Part shown: in pieces, positions 48,061 to 56,630 of the stretch
How positions within the stretch are numbered: position 1 is the first letter of the stretch
Layout: every line of letters begins with the position of its first letter
Source of the DNA: Hamiltosporidium tvaerminnensis FI-OER-3-3
Taxonomy: Eukaryota > Fungi > Microsporidia
Reading direction: 5' to 3'
Length of the DNA: 64,000 nucleotides
Assembly (NCBI GenBank): GCA_022605425.2
Contig: CM061251.1
Location: 62,001-126,000, forward strand
Notes under the pieces: model-generated
What the model was told of the DNA's origin: nothing
What the model saw: the letters and a program-made list of their open reading frames with translations, nothing else
The model's database searches: none
Position numbers and translations under genes: made by a program

Positions 48061-49614
48061 AGAAGATAGCAGAGGAATTCCAACACGTAGCCTATTTGAA
48101 GAAGTACAGAGCAAACTTATATAAAGAGTTGAAAGACTTTTTCACACTAGATTAAATGCAAAAAATTTATTTTCTGCAATCAATCAACATGCGATCTGTT
48201 AATCAACTATCACATGGAGTACTTCGACTTGAACCGGCTGACTTCTCTAAGTTAGGTAAGGCAGTTCGTGCGGTGTTGGTGAATAATAAGATACATCTTC
48301 GCCCAGGATGTAAAGAGCGTTTATACCTCCCTAAAACAGAACTTGAAAGAGGCCTACATAGTGTTGAGTTGCGAAGCGAACATATGCTTCTGCAACTCTT
48401 GGATTGTCTGGAAAAAAGTAAAGAAATATCAACTAGACTAGCAGCAATCCTCAAGGTGGAGAATAATAATAAACCCCATCTTGCACTAATAAAAGGCTTC
48501 TTAAAAGTAAAGTACAGGTTGGTAGAAGAAGTCACTAAGAAAAGTTTAGAAGCAGCTCAACTTGCAAAACTATATAACGAAATAGAAAAACGAAAACTCC
48601 ATTCAAAGTTATATAATGCAAGGAAAAATGAGCTTTTAAGTGTTAGTGACTCTTCAAGATGGCTAAAGAAAGCGAATATTAGGCCACGAAATGAAGCTGT
48701 GTTCTGCTATATCCAGGATAGAAATGTATTCTGGGGAGCAGATGGTGTATGTCAACATTGCAGGAAGTCTGGTAAGACTGTGGATCATCTAGCAACTCGA
48801 TGTGAAAAAATGCTAGGCCATGATTACACTAGACGGCATAATGAAGTGGTTAGATGCCTACACCTTCTCCTTCTAAATAGATATAAGTTTAAGTCTTCAA
48901 AACGAATAAGGAGCCACTCAGTTCAAGAAATTCTTGATAATGAGTATGCAGAGATAAGAGTGGACACCAGAATTAAAACTGATGTTAAAATTCGGAATAA
49001 CAGACCCGACATATTTATTTTAGATAAGAAGAAGAATAAGATAACACTCATTGAAGTAGGAATCACTTCCCAAGATTCACTTCAAATAGTTGAAACTGAA
49101 AAACTTAGGAAGTATGACCTGCTAGCCAATGAGTTGGGCCTTATTTATAAGTGTAGTGTTGAAATAATCCCTTATGTGATGACCTGGGACGGTATTGTGA
49201 CAAAATACCATAAATCTCAACTTAAAAGACTAGAAACACCCATGAATGTAGAGGCATACATTCAGTCTATATTACTTAAGAAGACAGTCGAAACAATTTC
49301 CTTTGATCGACGAAGAGGACTCGAGTCTGGTCCAAATGCCGAGGAGAGCTTAGAGAGAGCATCATTAAGTGTTATTTTAGGAGCTTAGATGCATAAACAA
49401 CCAATACCTCCTTTAAAGCAAGTAGACAACGAGGAAGATGATGTTAAAACAAAAAATACAAAAAATATTTTACTCCTTATTTTGGATGGTATAACCACAG
49501 CAAAGGAACCAACAACTAATACAAATGAAGAGTTGGAGTTGGAGGAAGAGATATAAGTGGTTGAAATGGTAGAAAGAATTATTTAAAAGAGAAAAATTTG
49601 TTAACCCAGAATTT
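48061..49614 (+). mobile_element. R4/Dong-like RLE LINE, 5'-truncated copy D (post-RT region, CCHC finger, restriction-like endonuclease)
   Basis: ORF 48156-49388: ERLYLPKTELERGL (RLYxPRxxGGRGL-like), CQHC...H...C, RRHNEV, RPD...IEVG and EKLRKY. Confidence 0.93.
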
Positions 49615-49840
49615 TATATTCTTATTATAACTCATATATTACTATTTATATTTTAAATATTAAATCTTTCTAACTTATATATTCCTATTTATCTTCTAAA
49701 CAATATTTCTTATCTCTTATACTTATATTCTTACTTATATATTAAAACGTTATTTTTCTTATAATTAACACACCTTAAAACAGACTTTTATTACTCTATA
49801 TCATTAAAACCCTCTTAAACCAAGCTTATATTACTTCTTA

Positions 49841-50105
49841 TAATTAACACCCCTCTTAAAATACCCTTATTATTTTCTATCCACTTTCCTTTATCTCTAT
49901 CTCTCTATCCTTATAATTAACACCCTCTTAAAATACTCTTATTATTTTCTATCCACTTTCCTTTATCTCTATCTCTCTATCCTTATAATTAACACCCTCT
50001 TAAAATACTCTTATTATTTTCTATCCCCTTCCCCCTTTCCTCTATCCACTTTCCTTTATCTCTCTACCCCACCTATCAATACACTAACACCCCTCCTTAA
50101 ATACC
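49841..50105. repeat. C/T-rich ~72-bp tandem repeat immediately upstream of RPA1
   Basis: AATTAACACCC(C)TCTTAAAATAC...CTATCCACTTTCCTTTATCTCTATC repeated ~3 times. Confidence 0.9.
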
Positions 50106-50136
50106 GTTATATTCCTTTTACTTATACAACCCTCTT

Positions 50137-53100
50137 ATGAACATAAACGGTTTCCCAACGAAAATTTCATTTTCCACATACAACCACCAACAAATAAAAG
50201 AATTATCAAAAATAAAAATAACAACATCCACACCTTTCGACACATTAGGAAATCCAATAAAAAACGGTTTATACGATACATCTTTAGGTCCACTTACCAA
50301 CAAAGAGACATGTACATCATGTCATCTCAATTTCTTTGAATGTCCCGGACACTTCGGATATATTGAGTTACCTATGTGTGTGTATAATCCTATGCATTTC
50401 GATTCATTACTTAAAATTCTTAGAAACTCATGTCTCAATTGCCACACTCTCAAAGAAAAGCTTGTATTCAGCAAAAGAAAAAATATCAATAGTGATATAG
50501 ATAATGGTGAGAATGGTGATATAGACCTTAGTGATACAGAGAATACTAATATAGACTATACTAATATAGACAATACTAATACATACCATACTGATACATA
50601 CCATACTGATACATACCATACTGATACATACCATACTGATACATACCATACTGATACATACCATACTAACAACATACCTCATAATATACCACATAATATA
50701 CCAAACACAAGTATAAATAACAACATACTAAACACAAGTATAAATAACAACATACCACATAATATACCACATAATATACCTCATAATATACCAAACAATA
50801 ATAATCATTTTACTGTTGACCCTCTTAAAATCCTCTTTAAAAACACCCACAAAAAATGTAAAAAATGCAAACAAAAAACCCCACAAATAACCCACCACAA
50901 ACACTTATACATCCTTATAAACAACACCCCTACCCCACTACTCCAAATACAAACCCACATATCAAAATTATACCTTAAAGAAAACCACCACCCCTTTTTA
51001 AATCCAAATATTTTTTTCCTTATAAATATACCAGTAACACCTAATAAATTTAGACCACTTAGTTATATTAACGGTAACACATTTGAACATCCACAAAATA
51101 TAATTTTATCTAAAATTATAAAAGTAAGCGAAGAACTCAAAGAAGGAACAGGTAACAGTGGGGGTATGGATAGGGATATTAGTAACAGTGGAGATATTAG
51201 TAATAGGGATATTAGTACTAGGGATAATAGTACTAGGAATAATAACATAAAAGACACTAAAGACATAATAGACACTAAAGACATAAAAGACATAAAAGAC
51301 ATAATAGACACTAAAGACACTATCACACCCCTTGTATCCTCTCTACAACTCTCTGTTAATATGTATTATGACTCTTCTTGTGTTCGTGTTAAAGGTAAAA
51401 CACTTCTTATAGGTTTAAAACAATTATTAGAAAAAAAAGAAGGTTTATTTCGTAAGAATATAATGGGTAAACGTGTTAATTATGCAGCTAGATCAGTAAT
51501 ATCACCTGATCCATGTTTACATACTAAAGAAATTGGTATTCCTATAGAAATAGCAAGTAAATTAACATTTCCTGAACAAGTAACACCTTATAATATAAAT
51601 AGATTAAAAAAATATATTATTAACGGTAATTCATATCCAGGTGCTGTATTATTAGAAAATAAGAATATAATAACACATTTACAATATATAGGATTAGAAA
51701 AGAGAATAGCACTTAGTAACTCACTATCATATGTGTGTGGTGGTGGTGTGTGTGGTAGTTTTGGTGGTAGTAATAACGGTAATAACGATAACAGTAATAA
51801 CGGTAGTAACTTAGTAAACAACAATAACACAACCAACACAATAGTCTATAGACACTTACTAGATAATGATTATGTCTTAGTAAATAGACAACCTACTCTA
51901 CATAAACCAAGTATAATGTCTCATAGAGTTAAAGTACTTAAATATGAAAAGACACTTCGTATGCATTATGCTAATTGTAACAGTTATAATGCAGATTTTG
52001 ATGGAGATGAAATTAATATACATTTACCACAAGATGTTATATCACAAGTAGAAGCACAGATGTTAAGTTGTACTGATAGTAATTATACTGTATGGACTAA
52101 TGGGTCACCTATAAGAGGACTTGTACAGGATCATGTTATTGTAGGAACAAGGTTGTGTATGAAAGGGGTGTTTTATAGTAAAAGGGAGATGGAGGAGTAT
52201 ATAAGTGAGGTAAGGGGTGGTGATATAGGTGTGGGGGGTGATATAGGTATGGGTGGTGATATAGGTGTGGGTGATATGATATATGGTAGTAGTAATAAAG
52301 ATAGTAATAAAGATAAATATAAAGATAAAGATAAGGATAAAGATAAAGGATATAATGATAACAACCATACTAACAACAATACTAATAACAACACCACTAA
52401 TAATATCACTAGTCTCCTTCTAATTCCTCCTGCTATTCTTAGACCTGTTAGGTTATATACTGGTAAACAACTAATATCTTGTATTTTATTATCTTTAAAT
52501 ATAAAAATAACATATAAAGGTAAATCTAAAGTACCTTTTAATTGTACAGATAAATATACTTTAATAATTAAAGGGTATTTATTAACAGGTGTTATTGATA
52601 AGAATCAATTAGGTTCTGTTAATAAATCATTTATACATTATTGTAGTGTTATTTATAATAAAGAAATATGTAATGAATTATTAAGTGTATTTAGTAGAGT
52701 ATTTAATAGAATTATGGTTAGTGATGGTGTTAGTGTAGGGATTAAGGATATTATGTTGTGTAATGATTTTAAAAGGAGTGATATGATAAAGGTATGTAGA
52801 GAGAGGGGGAGAATAAAGGGTGAGGGTGATTATGAGGGTGGGGGTGATTATGAGGGTGGGGGTGATTATGAGGGTAATGATATTGATTATGAGGGTGGGG
52901 GTGATTATGAGGGTAATGTATTAGAGGGTGATATGATAAAGGGTGTTAGTGAACAGGATATGTTAGAGGGTGTTAGTGATAGTACTAGTAGTTATAAGGG
53001 TGTTAGTGATAAGGATAGTAGTTATAAGGGTGTTAGTGATCTTACATGTAATTTAGAGGGTGATAACACTACTACTAATACTTTACACCCTGTTAACACC

Positions 53101-55341
53101 ACTACTAATACTTTACACCCTGTTAACACCACTACTAATACTTTACACCCTGTTAACACCACTACTAATACTTTACACCCTGTTAACACCACTACTAATA
53201 CTTTACACCCTGTTAACAACACTACTAATAAACAACACCCTGTTAACAACACTACTAATAAACAACACCCCTCCACCAACACCACTCCTCATACAACCAC
53301 CCACATACAAAATAACACTTCTAAAAGACTTAAACCTTTATCACCTATAAATAACCCTTCTGAGTCACAAATTAAAACCCTTATGTCTGAATGTACTACT
53401 ACAATGATAAATGACTTACTACCCTCTTATTTACTAACCCCTTTTCCATATAACACCTTCTATTTAATAATAACCAGTGGTGCTAAAGGTAGTATTGTAA
53501 ATTTAAGTCAAATAAGTGTATTACTAGGACAACAAGAATTAGAAGGTAAAAGAGTAAGTAATATGATAAGTAATAAAACATTACCTTGTTATTCTATAAA
53601 AGATATGATAGAAATAGAAAGTAAAGGATTTATATTTGATAGGTTTTTAACAGGTATTAAAGAAAATATGTATTTTTTTCATTGTATGGCAGGTAGAGAA
53701 GGTCTTATTGATACAGCAGTTAAAACTAGTAAATCAGGATATTTACAAAGATGTTTAGTTAAACATATGGAAGGTGTTAAAGTAGAATATGATATGAGTG
53801 TTAGACAAGGTAAAAAGGTAATACAATTTATATATGGAGATGATGGTATAGACTGTAGTAAATGGAGTCTTATAAGAGAGTATGATATGTACAAAGAGAA
53901 TTGTGGTTATGGTGATAGTAATAGGGTTAGGGATAGTACTAGAGATAGGGATTGGGATAGGGATAGTAATACTATTAGTAATAGTAACCCTTTTAGTATT
54001 TATGGTAGGATATCTACCCCTATATTTAATAATAATAATACTACCCCTATATCTACCCCTATATCTAATAATATATCTACCCCTTTATCTAATAATATAT
54101 CTACCCCTATATCTATGTCTAGTGTTATTAATTATTTCCCTCCTCAACTGTTTATTCCTTCTTTAAAATACTTTGAGGATTTAAAAGTATATTGTGATAA
54201 GAATATAGGTTATAATGGTGATAGTAATAGGGATATAAGTAATAGGGATATAGGTAATAGGGATATAGGTAATAGGGATATAGGTAATAGGGATATAGGT
54301 AATAGGGATATAGGTAATAGGGATATAGGTAATAGGGATATAGGTAATAGGGATATAGGTAATAGGGATAGTATTAGTAATAGGGATATAGGTAATAATA
54401 ATGATTTACGTAATAATGAAATACCTTATAATAATGAAATACCTTATAATAACAGTTTAAGGAATTATAACGATATACCTTTTAATAACCATAATAATAC
54501 TAACACTAATACTACTAATACTAATACCTCTAATACTAATCATAACACTAATCATAACACTAATAATAATACTACTAATACTAATATTCTTGTTAGTTAC
54601 ATTTTAAAAAAATACATTTCAAGTTTGGTTGTAGCTGGTGAGTCAGTAGGTGTATTAGCTGCACAGAGTATAGGTGAACCTTCTACACAAATGACTCTAA
54701 ACACTTTTCATTTAGCAGGTGTAGGTTCTAAAAATGTAACACTTGGAATACCAAGATTACGTGAAATATTAATGGTAGCTTCTAAGAAAATACAGACACC
54801 TGTTATTAGTGTAAGGTATTATAATATTTCTAATGTTTTATTAGAAAGAGTAATGAGTTGTGTTGTTTTAAAGGAATGTGTAGATAGGATTAGTGTTAGT
54901 GAGATAGGTAATAGGATTAGTGTTAATCTAGAGATAAACGGTAGGTATTTTATGGGGGGTATAAGTAGGGGTGGGGAGTGTGGTGGGTGTATTGGTGATA
55001 GTAAGGAGTATGATAGTGGTAGTAGTATTGGTGGTGGTAAGGAGTATGATAATAATACTAATAATATAGATAATACTAATAATATAGATAATACTAATAA
55101 TATAGATAATACTAATAATACTAATAATATAACAGATACTAACACACTAAATACTAATAACACTATAAATACTAACACTATAAATGATAATAACACTAAT
55201 TCTTATGTTGTTACTTCTTCTTCTATTTATAAGGTTGTTAAAGGTAAATATTTAAAGATGGTTGATAAGAGTATAAAGAATCTTTATGGTGTATTAAATA
55301 ATTATAAAGGGAGTTGTATAAAGGTAAGGGGTGGAGGGAGT

Positions 55342-55374
<33 letters not shown>

Positions 55375-56280
55375 AATAGTGGTAGTAGTGAGGGGAGTAG
55401 TGAGGAGAGTAAGGAGATAGATGAAGAATATATAGGAAAGGTAGAAGATAGTAGTGAGGAGGATGAGGGTGAGGATGAGGGTGAGGGTGAAGGTGATAGG
55501 AGAAAGGATAAGAAGAAGGATAAGAGAAAAGATAGGAGAAAGGATAAGAAAAAGGATAAAAAGAAGGATAAGAAAAAGAAGAATAACCATACAAAAAACA
55601 AGAATAACCACCCAAATACAAATACAAAGAATAATATCAGATTCTATTGTATTTCTAACTTAGAAACCTCTTTTGTTGGTAGAATTATAAATTTAAGTTT
55701 TGATTTAAATTTTGATAAAAATATAATTTTATTTCCTATTTTAGAAGATACATTAAATAAAGTGATAGTTAGATGTGTAGAAGGTTTAAGAAATCCTATA
55801 TGTGATAAGAATATATTAAATATAAATGGTAATGATTTATATTCTTTATGTTCAGTAGTAAATATAAATAAAAATATAAAAAATTATAAAAATTTTTTAG
55901 ATATAGAAAAGTCATATTGTAATGATGTATATGGTATGTATAAGATATTAGGAGTTGAAGGGTGTAGAAGTGTATTGGTACGAGAAATAGAGAGTGTTTT
56001 TGATGTTTATGGTATAGGTGTTGATAAGAGACATTTAGGATTAATTTCTGATTATTTGTTGGTAGATGGTGTGTATTCTAGTTTTAGTAGATTTGGGATG
56101 GAAAAAAGTGAATCTATTTTGTTAAAAATGAGTTTTGAGAGTTGTTATTCTGTGTTGAGAGATGCTAGTCATAGAGAGTTAGGGGATTGTTTGGAAGGAC
56201 CGAGTGGTTGTTTAACTGTTGGGTTGCCTGTTAGAAATGGGACAGGGTGTTTTGAGTTGCTTTATGATATGGAAGAGTAA
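50137..56280 (+). CDS. RPA1: DNA-directed RNA polymerase I largest subunit (A190) with multiple low-complexity inserts
   Basis: GLYD..LGP, CPGHFGYIELP, KKEGLFRKNIMGKRVNYAARSVISPDP, NRQPTLHKPSIM, HYANCNSYNADFDGD, HCMAGREGLIDTAVKTS and TQMTLNTFHLAG...NVTLGIPRLREI (Pol I-type signatures). Confidence 0.97.
52920..53275 (+). repeat. In-frame 30-bp tandem array within RPA1 (LEGVSDSTSS-type then LHPVNTTTNT-type units)
   Basis: GGGTG(T/A) at 30-bp spacing up to ~53060, then ACACCCT at 30-bp spacing to ~53270. Confidence 0.95.
54226..54395 (+). repeat. In-frame 15-bp array (AATAGGGATATAGGT; NRDIG) within RPA1
   Basis: About ten near-perfect copies. Confidence 0.95.
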
Positions 56281-56299
56281 AAATAAAGCGATAAATATA

Positions 56300-56630
56300 T
56301 TTTTGTTATGTGTTATGTGTGTTTGTTATGTGTATTTGTTATTTGTTATGTGTGTTTGTTATTTGTTATGTTATTTGTTAGTACTATTAGTAGTTCTTAG
56401 TATTTATTAGTAGTGTTTCTTATTAGTAGTTCTTAGTATTTCTTTATTTTCTTAGTATTTATTGTTAGTTCTTAGTACTAGTAGTTCTTAATACTATGTT
56501 AGTTCTTAGTACTAGTAGTTCTTAATACTATGTTATTTGTTAGTGTTTCTTTATTTTCTTAGTACTATGTTAGTTCTTAGTATTTATTGTTAGTTCTTAG
56601 TACTATGTTATTTGTTAGTGTTTCTTTATT
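56300..56630. repeat. G/T-rich short-period repeats 3' of RPA1
   Basis: TTTGTTATG and TTAGTTCTTAGTA units. Confidence 0.85.

What the first reader, a model, noticed from the sequence alone, without database searches (positions are those of the whole stretch)
52920..53275. One 30-bp array whose units swap G for C at homologous positions across its centre without losing phase
Seen: a left unit reads TTA GAG GGT GTT AGT GAT AGT ACT AGT AGT (LEGVSDSTSS) and right units read TTA CAC CCT GTT AAC ACC ACT ACT AAT ACT (LHPVNTTTNT). GAG GGT becomes CAC CCT and AGT becomes ACT/AAT/AAC on the same strand. The junction unit TTA GAG GGT GAT AAC ACT ACT ACT AAT ACT (~53053-53082) is a hybrid that keeps the 10-codon register. 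The arms are also partly reverse-complementary (AGGGTGT/ACACCCT; AGTACTAGTAGT/ACTACTAATACT). Inference: one ancestral repeat was driven in opposite compositional directions on either side of a fixed point. Simple slippage or a plain inverted duplication does not explain this.
Basis: seen in the sequence. Interest (0 to 1): 0.85.

Follow-up and report, generated by a model that had tools for sequence, protein, structure and literature searches.

The report
Polar in-frame repeat with flipped core
Inside the RNA polymerase I gene of the water-flea parasite Hamiltosporidium sits one copy of a genome-wide, translated 30-base repeat whose front units carry GGG and back units CCC at the same spot. 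This order holds in dozens of other genes, and a matching strand bias reaches into the neighbouring conserved codons.

Summary
Window 52936-53262 is one in-frame direct array of 10-codon units: four G-type units, a hybrid unit (53053-53082), then six C-type units, with no loss of phase.

It is not peculiar to this locus. The host gene is RPA1 of Hamiltosporidium tvaerminnensis. The unit belongs to a genus-specific family: the core A-SSS-TGTTA occurs 5036 times against 627 for the control. The family sits in frame in many housekeeping genes. This scan had already reported it on other DNA of this genome.

New here:
- G and C units are the same unit in the same orientation. Only the 11-13 nt palindromic core is mirror-related.
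- The core triplet is all-or-none: GGG 361, CCC 116, mixed 8. That argues for a one-step flip, not gradual drift.
- Order is a rule: 43 G-then-C arrays, none C-then-G, in 20 annotated proteins.
- The hybrid unit corresponds to two units in H. magnivora, so it is an in-register fusion.
- Conserved RPA1 blocks carry a saw-tooth skew, also at third codon positions (p 2e-9).

The cause is inferred, not shown: template switching at the core plus a break-centred single-strand bias.

The parts
50137..56280 (+). Host gene: RNA polymerase I largest subunit (RPA1). A single ORF of 2047 codons with about nine low-complexity inserts.
   Evidence: Best hits are microsporidian RPA1 carrying the five RNA polymerase Rpb1 Pfam domains. 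Insert map against 12 orthologues.
52817..52914 (+). Outer G arm: an 18-nt array encoding GGGDYE-type units. C-free.
   Evidence: TRF period 18, 5.3 copies. GC skew +1.0. Copy number differs in H. magnivora.
52936..53052 (+). Four G-type units of 27/30 nt with core A-GGG-TGTTA (IKGV, LEGV, YKGV, YKGV).
53053..53082 (+). Hybrid unit LEGDNTTTNT: a G-state core followed by a C-type spacer.
   Evidence: H. magnivora has two units here (LEGDNYSTSN then YKGNSTTTNT), so this unit equals their in-register fusion.
53083..53262 (+). Six C-type units of 30 nt with core A-CCC-TGTTA (LHPV x5, QHPV).
   Evidence: All five comparable units differ from H. magnivora at the same unit position, ACC against ACT.
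53263..53330 (+). Degenerate C-rich tail of the insert (QHPSTNTTPHTTTH...). G-free.
   Evidence: (C run 53247-53321).
52411..52789 (+). Conserved block 5' of the insert. It turns G-only towards the insert: the last 120 nt have G 31 and C 0.
   Evidence: The last 382 nt (from 52408) are 100% identical at DNA level in H. magnivora. It aligns to orthologues.
53361..53899 (+). Conserved block 3' of the insert. It starts C-rich (first 120 nt: G 10, C 28) and ends G-rich (last 120 nt: G 30, C 5).

Best explanation
The feature is one copy of a Hamiltosporidium-specific, DNA-level family of 27/30-nt minisatellites that sit in frame in variable loops of many housekeeping proteins.

Shown:
- It is a single direct array of one 10-codon unit (x-[K/E/Q]-G-V-[S/N]-[D/N]-xxxx, or x-[H/N/D]-P-V-N-N-x-T-xx). 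The units exist in two core states, A-GGG-TGTTA and A-CCC-TGTTA.
- The core is an interrupted palindrome (AACA-SSS-TGTT), so GGG to CCC equals an inversion of the core.
- The swap is all-or-none.
- G-state units precede C-state units as a family-wide rule.
- Arrays change by in-register gain and loss of units, which made the hybrid unit.
- The array lies at the sharp downward step of a saw-tooth strand bias. The bias is G/T-rich 5' of each insert centre and C/A-rich 3' of it, and it extends into third codon positions of conserved blocks.

Inferred:
- The core flips by template switching between the short inverted arms (spacer inversion). This makes the two halves of the array pair with each other.
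- The strand bias is the footprint of recurrent exposure of the 3'-ending strand on each side of the array centre, as after 5'-to-3' resection of a break. C-to-T and A-to-G changes then accumulate on the exposed strand.
- The insert is translated as a tolerated disordered loop with no function of its own.
For: Family:
- The core A-SSS-TGTTA occurs 5036 times against 627 for the reversed-pattern control.
- There are 83 and 146 genome matches to the C and G arrays.
- In-frame copies occur in aaRS, AAA ATPase, Sec7, Prp8, myosin and RNA polymerase beta-subunit genes.
- All 20 database hits to the repeat region are Hamiltosporidium proteins.

Same orientation and register:
- G x C identity over 25 non-core positions is 13.5. 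G x G gives 14.2 and C x C 15.0. Other in-frame shifts give 7.6-9.9.
- The mirrored reverse complement gives 10.2, and its signal is confined to the core flanks.
- Nearly all genome-wide G-to-C steps are exactly 30 nt apart.

All-or-none core: GGG 361, CCC 116, mixed G/C triplets 8, while G-to-A/T variants number about 86.

Order:
- No monotonic C-then-G array among 69 in-frame chains.
- 43 G-then-C, 0 C-then-G and 9 interleaved arrays in 20 proteins.
- 181 against 73 adjacent steps genome-wide, and the C-to-G steps are almost all inside interleaved arrays.

Unit turnover: H. magnivora has a 413/413-nt identical flank but rearranged arrays, and two units where the hybrid stands.

Gradient:
- In 7 of 7 conserved blocks the last 120 nt are more G-skewed than the first 120 nt.
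- All positions: G:C 91:146 against 202:57 (p 2e-19). Third positions: 12:36 against 46:9 (p 2e-9).
- Purine-ending codons shift from A to G and pyrimidine-ending codons from C to T.
- Skew by quintile rises -0.20, 0.02, 0.21, 0.40, 0.64.

Arm pairing: MFE is -87.4 against -58.3 +/- 4.6 for arm-wise shuffles.

Literature:
- 3-nt spacer inversions by template switching occur in yeast coding DNA (PMC8604942).
- After bidirectional resection, C is mutated left of a break and G right of it on the top strand (PMC6786661).
- Confirmed introns in this genome average 28 nt, so such inserts are not spliced (PMC10542269).
Against: - No core flip was caught between H. tvaerminnensis and H. magnivora in the comparable part of the array.
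- The palindrome arms here are 4-7 nt. [quoted passage not shown]
- Template switching alone does not predict G before C. The G-rich strands fold only slightly better than their complements, by 2.5-3.4 kcal/mol of ensemble energy.
- The gradient was measured in one gene, with block limits set by an imperfect alignment. Orthologues show a weaker amino-acid trend in the same direction.
- G and C units of the same array are not significantly closer to each other than to units at other loci (p 0.08). Repeated local conversion is therefore not shown.
- No breaks, single-stranded DNA or transcripts could be examined.
Confidence: 0.6

Rival explanations
1. An ancestral homogeneous array at this locus diverged in place by opposite point-mutation pressures, towards G on the left and towards C on the right of a fixed point.
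For: A regional bias of opposite sign on the two sides exists and reaches synonymous sites. In the spacers G is replaced one position at a time by A or C. Intermediate peptides EGV, DPV and HPV, and KGV and NPV, occur.
Against: Mixed G/C core triplets are at background: 8 against 477. The bias seen at synonymous sites is of transition type, and transitions cannot turn G into C. The same composite, in the same order, occurs in dozens of genes, and the G-to-C junction region stands at this position in H. magnivora too.
Confidence: 0.12
2. Foldback or inverted duplication. The C arm is the reverse complement of the G arm, as in foldback elements whose long inverted ends are built of tandem sub-repeats.
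For: The cores are exact reverse complements (AACAGGGTGTT and AACACCCTGTT). One arm pair is 46 nt long and 72% complementary. The arms pair far better than arm-wise shuffles, z -6.3. G-then-C order reads the same on both strands, as a palindrome does.
Against: Outside the core flanks the mirrored identity is at background, and the spacers match better on the same strand: 9.3 against 7.6 of 18. The cores keep an exact 30-nt direct register across the junction. Interleaved G/C arrays keep that same register. Both arms are read in one frame and one direction.
Confidence: 0.1
3. Oriented functional motif. The 7-8 nt element (T)AACACCC is a DNA signal, for example the long form of the microsporidian CCC start-site motif. 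Arrays of it point outward from each spacer centre, and selection on the motif keeps the triplet pure.
For: Arrays carrying TTAACACCC lie directly upstream of the RPA1 start codon. The pure triplet despite a free protein context suggests a DNA-level constraint. Earlier scan notes report gene-pointing arrays in intergenic DNA (not checked here).
Against: Here the arrays lie inside an essential coding sequence, where an internal bidirectional promoter has no evident role. It does not explain the third-position gradient in conserved blocks.
Confidence: 0.12
4. Chance, or a telomere origin. Either two unrelated arrays lie side by side, or this is a head-to-head fusion of telomere-like repeats.
For: G-rich then C-rich on one strand is the pattern of a telomere fusion.
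Against: The register and the shared GTTA and spacer profile exclude unrelated arrays. The telomere repeat of this species is TTAGGG (PMC10542269), which is not the GGGTGTTA core. The units are 10 codons long and in frame.
Confidence: 0.03

Closest known systems
Rickettsia palindromic elements (selfish repeats inserted in frame in protein-coding genes; recalled from Ogata et al. 2000, and named in PMC1779305, listed but not read)
   Same: A dispersed DNA-level repeat sits in frame in many unrelated conserved genes. It is translated as an extra peptide in tolerant regions, and it has self-complementary parts.
   Different: This is a eukaryotic nuclear genome. There is no discrete element of fixed length; the copies are expandable tandem arrays of 27/30 nt. 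Only the core of each unit is palindromic. The family has a strict G-then-C polarity and comes with a flanking strand bias.
Template-switch mutations with inverted-repeat spacer inversion (PMC8604942; PMC5453318; PMC8794818)
   Same: A run of adjacent substitutions equals the reverse complement of the spacer between two short inverted arms. It changes one or two codons in one step and can be reversed.
   Different: The arms here are only 4-7 nt. The event is inferred from the lack of intermediates, not seen on a tree. It affects one half of a tandem array in a fixed polarity.
Single-switch strand-coordinated mutation clusters from bidirectional break resection (PMC6786661)
   Same: The geometry matches: on the top strand C is lost to the left of a point and G to the right of it, and the opposite order is absent.
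   Different: Those are single somatic or experimental events with an added deaminase. Here it is a fixed, genome-wide, germline compositional pattern, and no break was shown.
Low-complexity inserts of AT-rich parasite proteins, such as the Plasmodium asparagine-rich regions (recalled from general knowledge)
   Same: Lineage-specific, fast-evolving, in-frame repeats in loops of conserved proteins, changed by slippage.
   Different: Many genes share one unit with a conserved DNA core. The arrays have two core states, a fixed order, and a strand bias in the flanks.

Membership tests
Hamiltosporidium GGGTGTTA-core 27/30-nt minisatellite family (defined by this scan, not found in the papers read) | Core A-GGG-TGTTA or A-CCC-TGTTA once per unit | tested here: met
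   All 11 units of 52936-53262 carry AGGGT or ACCCT at unit positions 5-9. Ten continue with GTTA; the hybrid unit has GATA.
Hamiltosporidium GGGTGTTA-core 27/30-nt minisatellite family (defined by this scan, not found in the papers read) | Period of 27 or 30 nt, open in the sense frame | tested here: met
   Nine steps of 30 nt and one of 27 nt, inside the 2047-codon ORF.
Hamiltosporidium GGGTGTTA-core 27/30-nt minisatellite family (defined by this scan, not found in the papers read) | G-state units 5' of C-state units | tested here: met
   The window array reads GGGGGCCCCCC. Across the family there are 43 G-then-C arrays and none C-then-G.
Hamiltosporidium GGGTGTTA-core 27/30-nt minisatellite family (defined by this scan, not found in the papers read) | Many dispersed copies, restricted to the genus | tested here: met
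   5036 core matches against 627 for the control. 20 of 20 protein hits are H. tvaerminnensis or H. magnivora. Four other microsporidian RPA1 proteins lack the units.
Foldback transposon | Arms that are inverted copies of each other along their length | tested here: not met
   Mirrored identity is near background outside the 11-13 nt core. The direct 30-nt register is kept across the junction.
Foldback transposon | Target-site duplications, defined ends, a transposase partner | not tested
   Insert ends were only looked at as translated flanks. No conserved ends were noted there.
Rickettsia-palindromic-element type of in-frame selfish repeat | In-frame insertion in conserved genes | tested here: met
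Rickettsia-palindromic-element type of in-frame selfish repeat | A discrete palindromic element of roughly constant length | tested here: not met
   Arrays hold from 3 to 20 units. Only the cores are palindromic.
Template-switch spacer inversion | The changed bases equal the reverse complement of the spacer between inverted arms, with no intermediates | tested here: met
   The AACA-SSS-TGTT context. GGG 361, CCC 116, mixed 8.
Template-switch spacer inversion | The event is placed on a branch between close relatives | tested here: inconclusive
   No core differs between the two species in the roughly 430 nt of comparable array. Only one partial and chimeric sister contig was available.
Interstitial telomere fusion | Units are the species' telomere repeat | tested here: not met
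   The telomere repeat is TTAGGG (PMC10542269). The units here are 30-nt coding repeats.

The most novel reading that the evidence does not exclude
Every low-complexity insert of this genome marks a recurrent break or single-strand-exposure centre. The resection-type footprint is C-to-T and A-to-G on the 3'-ending strand on each side. This footprint has built the G-then-C polarity and has re-coded neighbouring conserved codons genome-wide. It would be a fixed, germline counterpart of single-switch mutation clusters, coupled to hairpin-core flipping in a self-spreading coding minisatellite.
Probability: 0.3. Interest if true: 0.85.

Novelty: new variant of a known kind. Interest (0 to 1): 0.68.

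Why it matters
- If the saw-tooth bias and the all-or-none core flips hold genome-wide, this microsporidian would show a DNA repeat lengthening a large share of its housekeeping proteins. Its local mutational field would also reshape the conserved codons next to the repeats.
- Break-centred, strand-asymmetric mutagenesis and template-switch flipping would become testable in natural populations. Many isolates and a sister species of this parasite exist.
- There are practical consequences. Shared arrays make short-read contigs chimeric. According to the 2023 genome paper, the earlier annotation predicted 890 introns against 98 in the Iso-Seq-based one; whether such inserts caused those false introns was not tested.

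Tried and rejected
I did not re-send it. Order was taken instead.
- The first folding script timed out. It was redone on a shorter stretch.
- Global dinucleotide shuffles gave only z -2.1. This understates arm pairing, because such shuffles mix the two arms.
- Test of whether G and C units of one array are closer to each other than to units at other loci: not significant, with 19 of 30 arrays positive (p 0.08).
- Prediction that complementary letters flank the core after a 7-nt inversion (position 4 of G units against position 10 of C units): the table shows no clear pattern.
- Telomere origin rejected.
- Spliced-out insert rejected on published evidence only.
- The 3' part of the H. magnivora contig was discarded, because it matches the C4 locus and not RPA1.
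- Papers read on Hamiltosporidium genomes do not mention this repeat family or the skew. The search was limited to open-access full text.
Full report
**What is there.** The finding lies in a single open reading frame, window 50137..56280 on the + strand (2047 codons). Its best relatives are microsporidian RNA polymerase I largest subunits with the five RNA polymerase Rpb1 Pfam domains. The window is contig 6, 62001-126000, of a 21.64-Mb assembly in 17 contigs. All 20 database proteins that match the repeat region come from Hamiltosporidium tvaerminnensis or H. magnivora. Assembly size and contig number match the published H. tvaerminnensis genome (PMC10542269).

In frame, the region reads as follows:
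- IKGVSEQDM (52936)
- LEGVSDSTSS (52963)
- YKGVSDKDSS (52993)
- YKGVSDLTCN (53023)
- the hybrid LEGDNTTTNT (53053-53082)
- LHPVNTTTNT four times (from 53083)
- LHPVNNTTNK (53203)
- QHPVNNTTNK (to 53262)
- a degenerate C-rich tail

Tandem Repeats Finder reports period 30 on both sides.

**It is one copy of a genome-wide family.** Searching the genome with either arm gave 83 and 146 matches at 70-88% identity. At contig 4 (locus L002) the same composite appears: YKGVSDRGSN units, a hybrid YKGVNNSTDT, then YHPVNNSTDT units. The register is the same, but a 1-nt insertion breaks the frame there. Other loci are long ORFs of unrelated conserved genes. Each carries one or several such inserts, and so do annotated proteins such as a Sec7 protein, Prp8, myosin and an RNA polymerase beta subunit.

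The core A-SSS-TGTTA occurs 5036 times in the genome, against 627 for the reversed-pattern control. Four other microsporidian RPA1 proteins have different, unrelated sequence at this position. Earlier agents of this scan had already described the family on other DNA of this genome. I reached it independently and then used their notes only as leads. The genome papers I read do not mention it.

**How the G and C units are related.** I collected 178 G-type and 128 C-type 30-nt units from in-frame arrays. Their consensus peptides are x-K-G-V-N-N-S-T-N-K and x-H-P-V-N-N-T-T-N-N.

Over the 25 positions outside the selected core:
- G x C identity on the same strand and in register is 13.5.
- That is almost as high as G x G (14.2) and C x C (15.0).
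- Other in-frame shifts give 7.6-9.9.
- The mirrored reverse complement gives 10.2, and its signal sits only in the letters next to the core.

In the spacer alone the same strand gives 9.3 of 18, against at most 7.6 for the reverse complement. Genome-wide, nearly all neighbouring G-core/C-core pairs are exactly 30 nt apart. Arrays also exist in which G and C units alternate in that same register. The two kinds are therefore one unit in one orientation.

**The core swap is all-or-none.** The core is an interrupted palindrome. AACAGGGTGTT is the exact reverse complement of AACACCCTGTT, so swapping the triplet equals inverting the core. In 321 kb of sampled sequence the triplet in A-NNN-TGTTA is GGG 361 times and CCC 116 times. 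It is a mixture of G and C only 8 times, whereas single G-to-A or G-to-T variants number about 86. The first 100 genome-wide matches give the same picture.

Peptide pairs fit a triplet flip: EGV/DPV, KGV/NPV and QGV/HPV. Nothing in a disordered loop should forbid Ala, Arg or mixed forms, so the purity points to a one-step DNA event or a DNA-level constraint. Template switching between short inverted arms is known to invert 2-5 nt spacers in yeast coding DNA (PMC8604942). A caveat is that the arms there were longer than 9 bp, whereas here they are 4-7 nt.

One consequence is that the two halves of the array can pair through their cores. The 327-nt array folds at -87.4 kcal/mol, against -58.3 +/- 4.6 for shuffles made within each arm. 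Reversing one arm abolishes this. The whole-region dinucleotide shuffle had given only z -2.1.

**Order.** Among 69 in-frame chains none runs from C units to G units. Most composites are monotonic G then C, and a few are interleaved. In 20 annotated Hamiltosporidium proteins I counted 43 G-then-C arrays, no C-then-G array and 9 interleaved ones. Genome-wide there are 181 adjacent G-to-C steps against 73 C-to-G steps. On contigs 1-9, where both lists are complete, all but three of the family's C-to-G steps lie in interleaved arrays.

In an unbiased 264-kb sample, tight junctions (60 nt or less) between any G-only and C-only blocks were 6 G-to-C and 0 C-to-G. The order reads the same on both strands, so it carries no information about gene direction.

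**Sister species.** A 1227-nt H. magnivora contig (L057) carries the orthologous region. The 413 aligned nt of conserved flank are identical, but the arrays differ in number and arrangement of units. Where H. tvaerminnensis has the hybrid unit, H. magnivora has two units, LEGDNYSTSN and YKGNSTTTNT. The hybrid equals the first half of one unit joined to the second half of the other, which is an in-register 30-nt fusion. The five comparable C units differ at the same unit position in every copy (ACC against ACT), which shows concerted change. No core differs in state between the two species. From about nt 800 the contig continues into the contig 4 locus (94.9% identity to L002). It is therefore most likely a short-read chimera across the shared repeat, and I did not use that part.

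**A strand bias that reaches conserved codons.** The gene and its flanks (49500-56400) are a mosaic of C-free and G-free stretches. The rest of the window is not. I marked seven conserved blocks using an alignment with 12 microsporidian orthologues.
- In all seven, the first 120 nt (just 3' of an insert) are more C-skewed than the last 120 nt (just 5' of the next insert).
- G:C is 91:146 against 202:57 (p 2e-19).
- At third codon positions G:C is 12:36 against 46:9 (p 2e-9).
- Purine-ending codons move from A to G and pyrimidine-ending codons from C to T towards the next insert.
- Skew rises steadily by quintile: -0.20, 0.02, 0.21, 0.40, 0.64.

The orthologues show a weaker amino-acid trend in the same direction, so part of the gradient is inherent to the protein. 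Several conserved residues are replaced in the expected sense, for example Ala to Val or Gly and Thr to Ser in G domains (my reading). The UFD2 gene, 146 kb away, shows the same block pattern.

**How it most likely works.**
- Shown: a direct array of one unit with two core states, a fixed order, unit turnover, and a saw-tooth bias centred on the inserts.
- Inferred: the core flips by template switching, and the bias is a mutational footprint.

On the top strand the bias is G/T-rich to the left of each centre and C/A-rich to the right. That is the pattern expected if the 3'-ending strand on each side of a break at the centre is repeatedly single-stranded and loses C and A by deamination. The same left-C, right-G geometry, with the opposite order absent, was shown experimentally for bidirectional resection in yeast (PMC6786661).

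Replication origins and divergent transcription predict the opposite sign (my reasoning from established strand-asymmetry models). Why the flipped cores lie on the 3' side remains open. The G-rich strands fold only slightly better than their complements.

Published Iso-Seq work found only 17 confirmed introns, with a mean length of 28 nt. The inserts are part of annotated proteins. They are therefore most likely translated, as loops at a position that varies among microsporidia.

**Verdict.** The feature is a member of a lineage-specific family that the scan had already met.

Noticed in passing
L057 (H. magnivora record PITI01003161.1), nt 796-1227: The short-read contig starts in RPA1 and ends in the orthologue of the contig 4 locus (94.9% identity to L002 1505-1937). 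The two parts are joined through the shared C-type array, so the contig is probably an assembly chimera.
   Followed up: yes
window 49825-50136: Directly upstream of the RPA1 start codon lie C/T-rich tandem units of about 60-70 nt. Each carries TTAACACCC, the C-state form of the same core.
   Followed up: partly
L002 about 1585-1600 (contig 4, about 423150): The composite array at this locus has a 1-nt insertion that breaks the YKGV/YHPV frame. This copy is either non-coding, decaying, or holds an assembly error.
   Followed up: no
genome contig 1: 585585, 626214, 1205794; and 1625622, 1661763, 1694127: Two 31-nt dispersed sequences, each found three times and identical among its copies, have AGGGTG at one end and CCCTG (or the reverse arrangement) at the other. 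They are unrelated to the 30-nt family and may be ends of a mobile element.
   Followed up: no
window 52408-52820 against L057 2-414: There is no difference in 413 nt of coding flank between the two named species, while the adjoining arrays are heavily rearranged. Repeat turnover is therefore far faster than point substitution.
   Followed up: partly
L005 2200-2589 (contig 1, about 860700-861090): A higher-order repeat of three units (IKGV, YNPV, YNPV) recurs at exact 30-nt steps. Here C-state cores sit next to spacers that still use AGT codons.
   Followed up: partly
window 50143-51153: The conserved N-terminal third of RPA1 is C-skewed (-0.3 to -0.6) and the C-terminal 128 codons are strongly G-skewed (G 111, C 16). 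A gene-long trend therefore underlies the local saw-tooth.
   Followed up: partly
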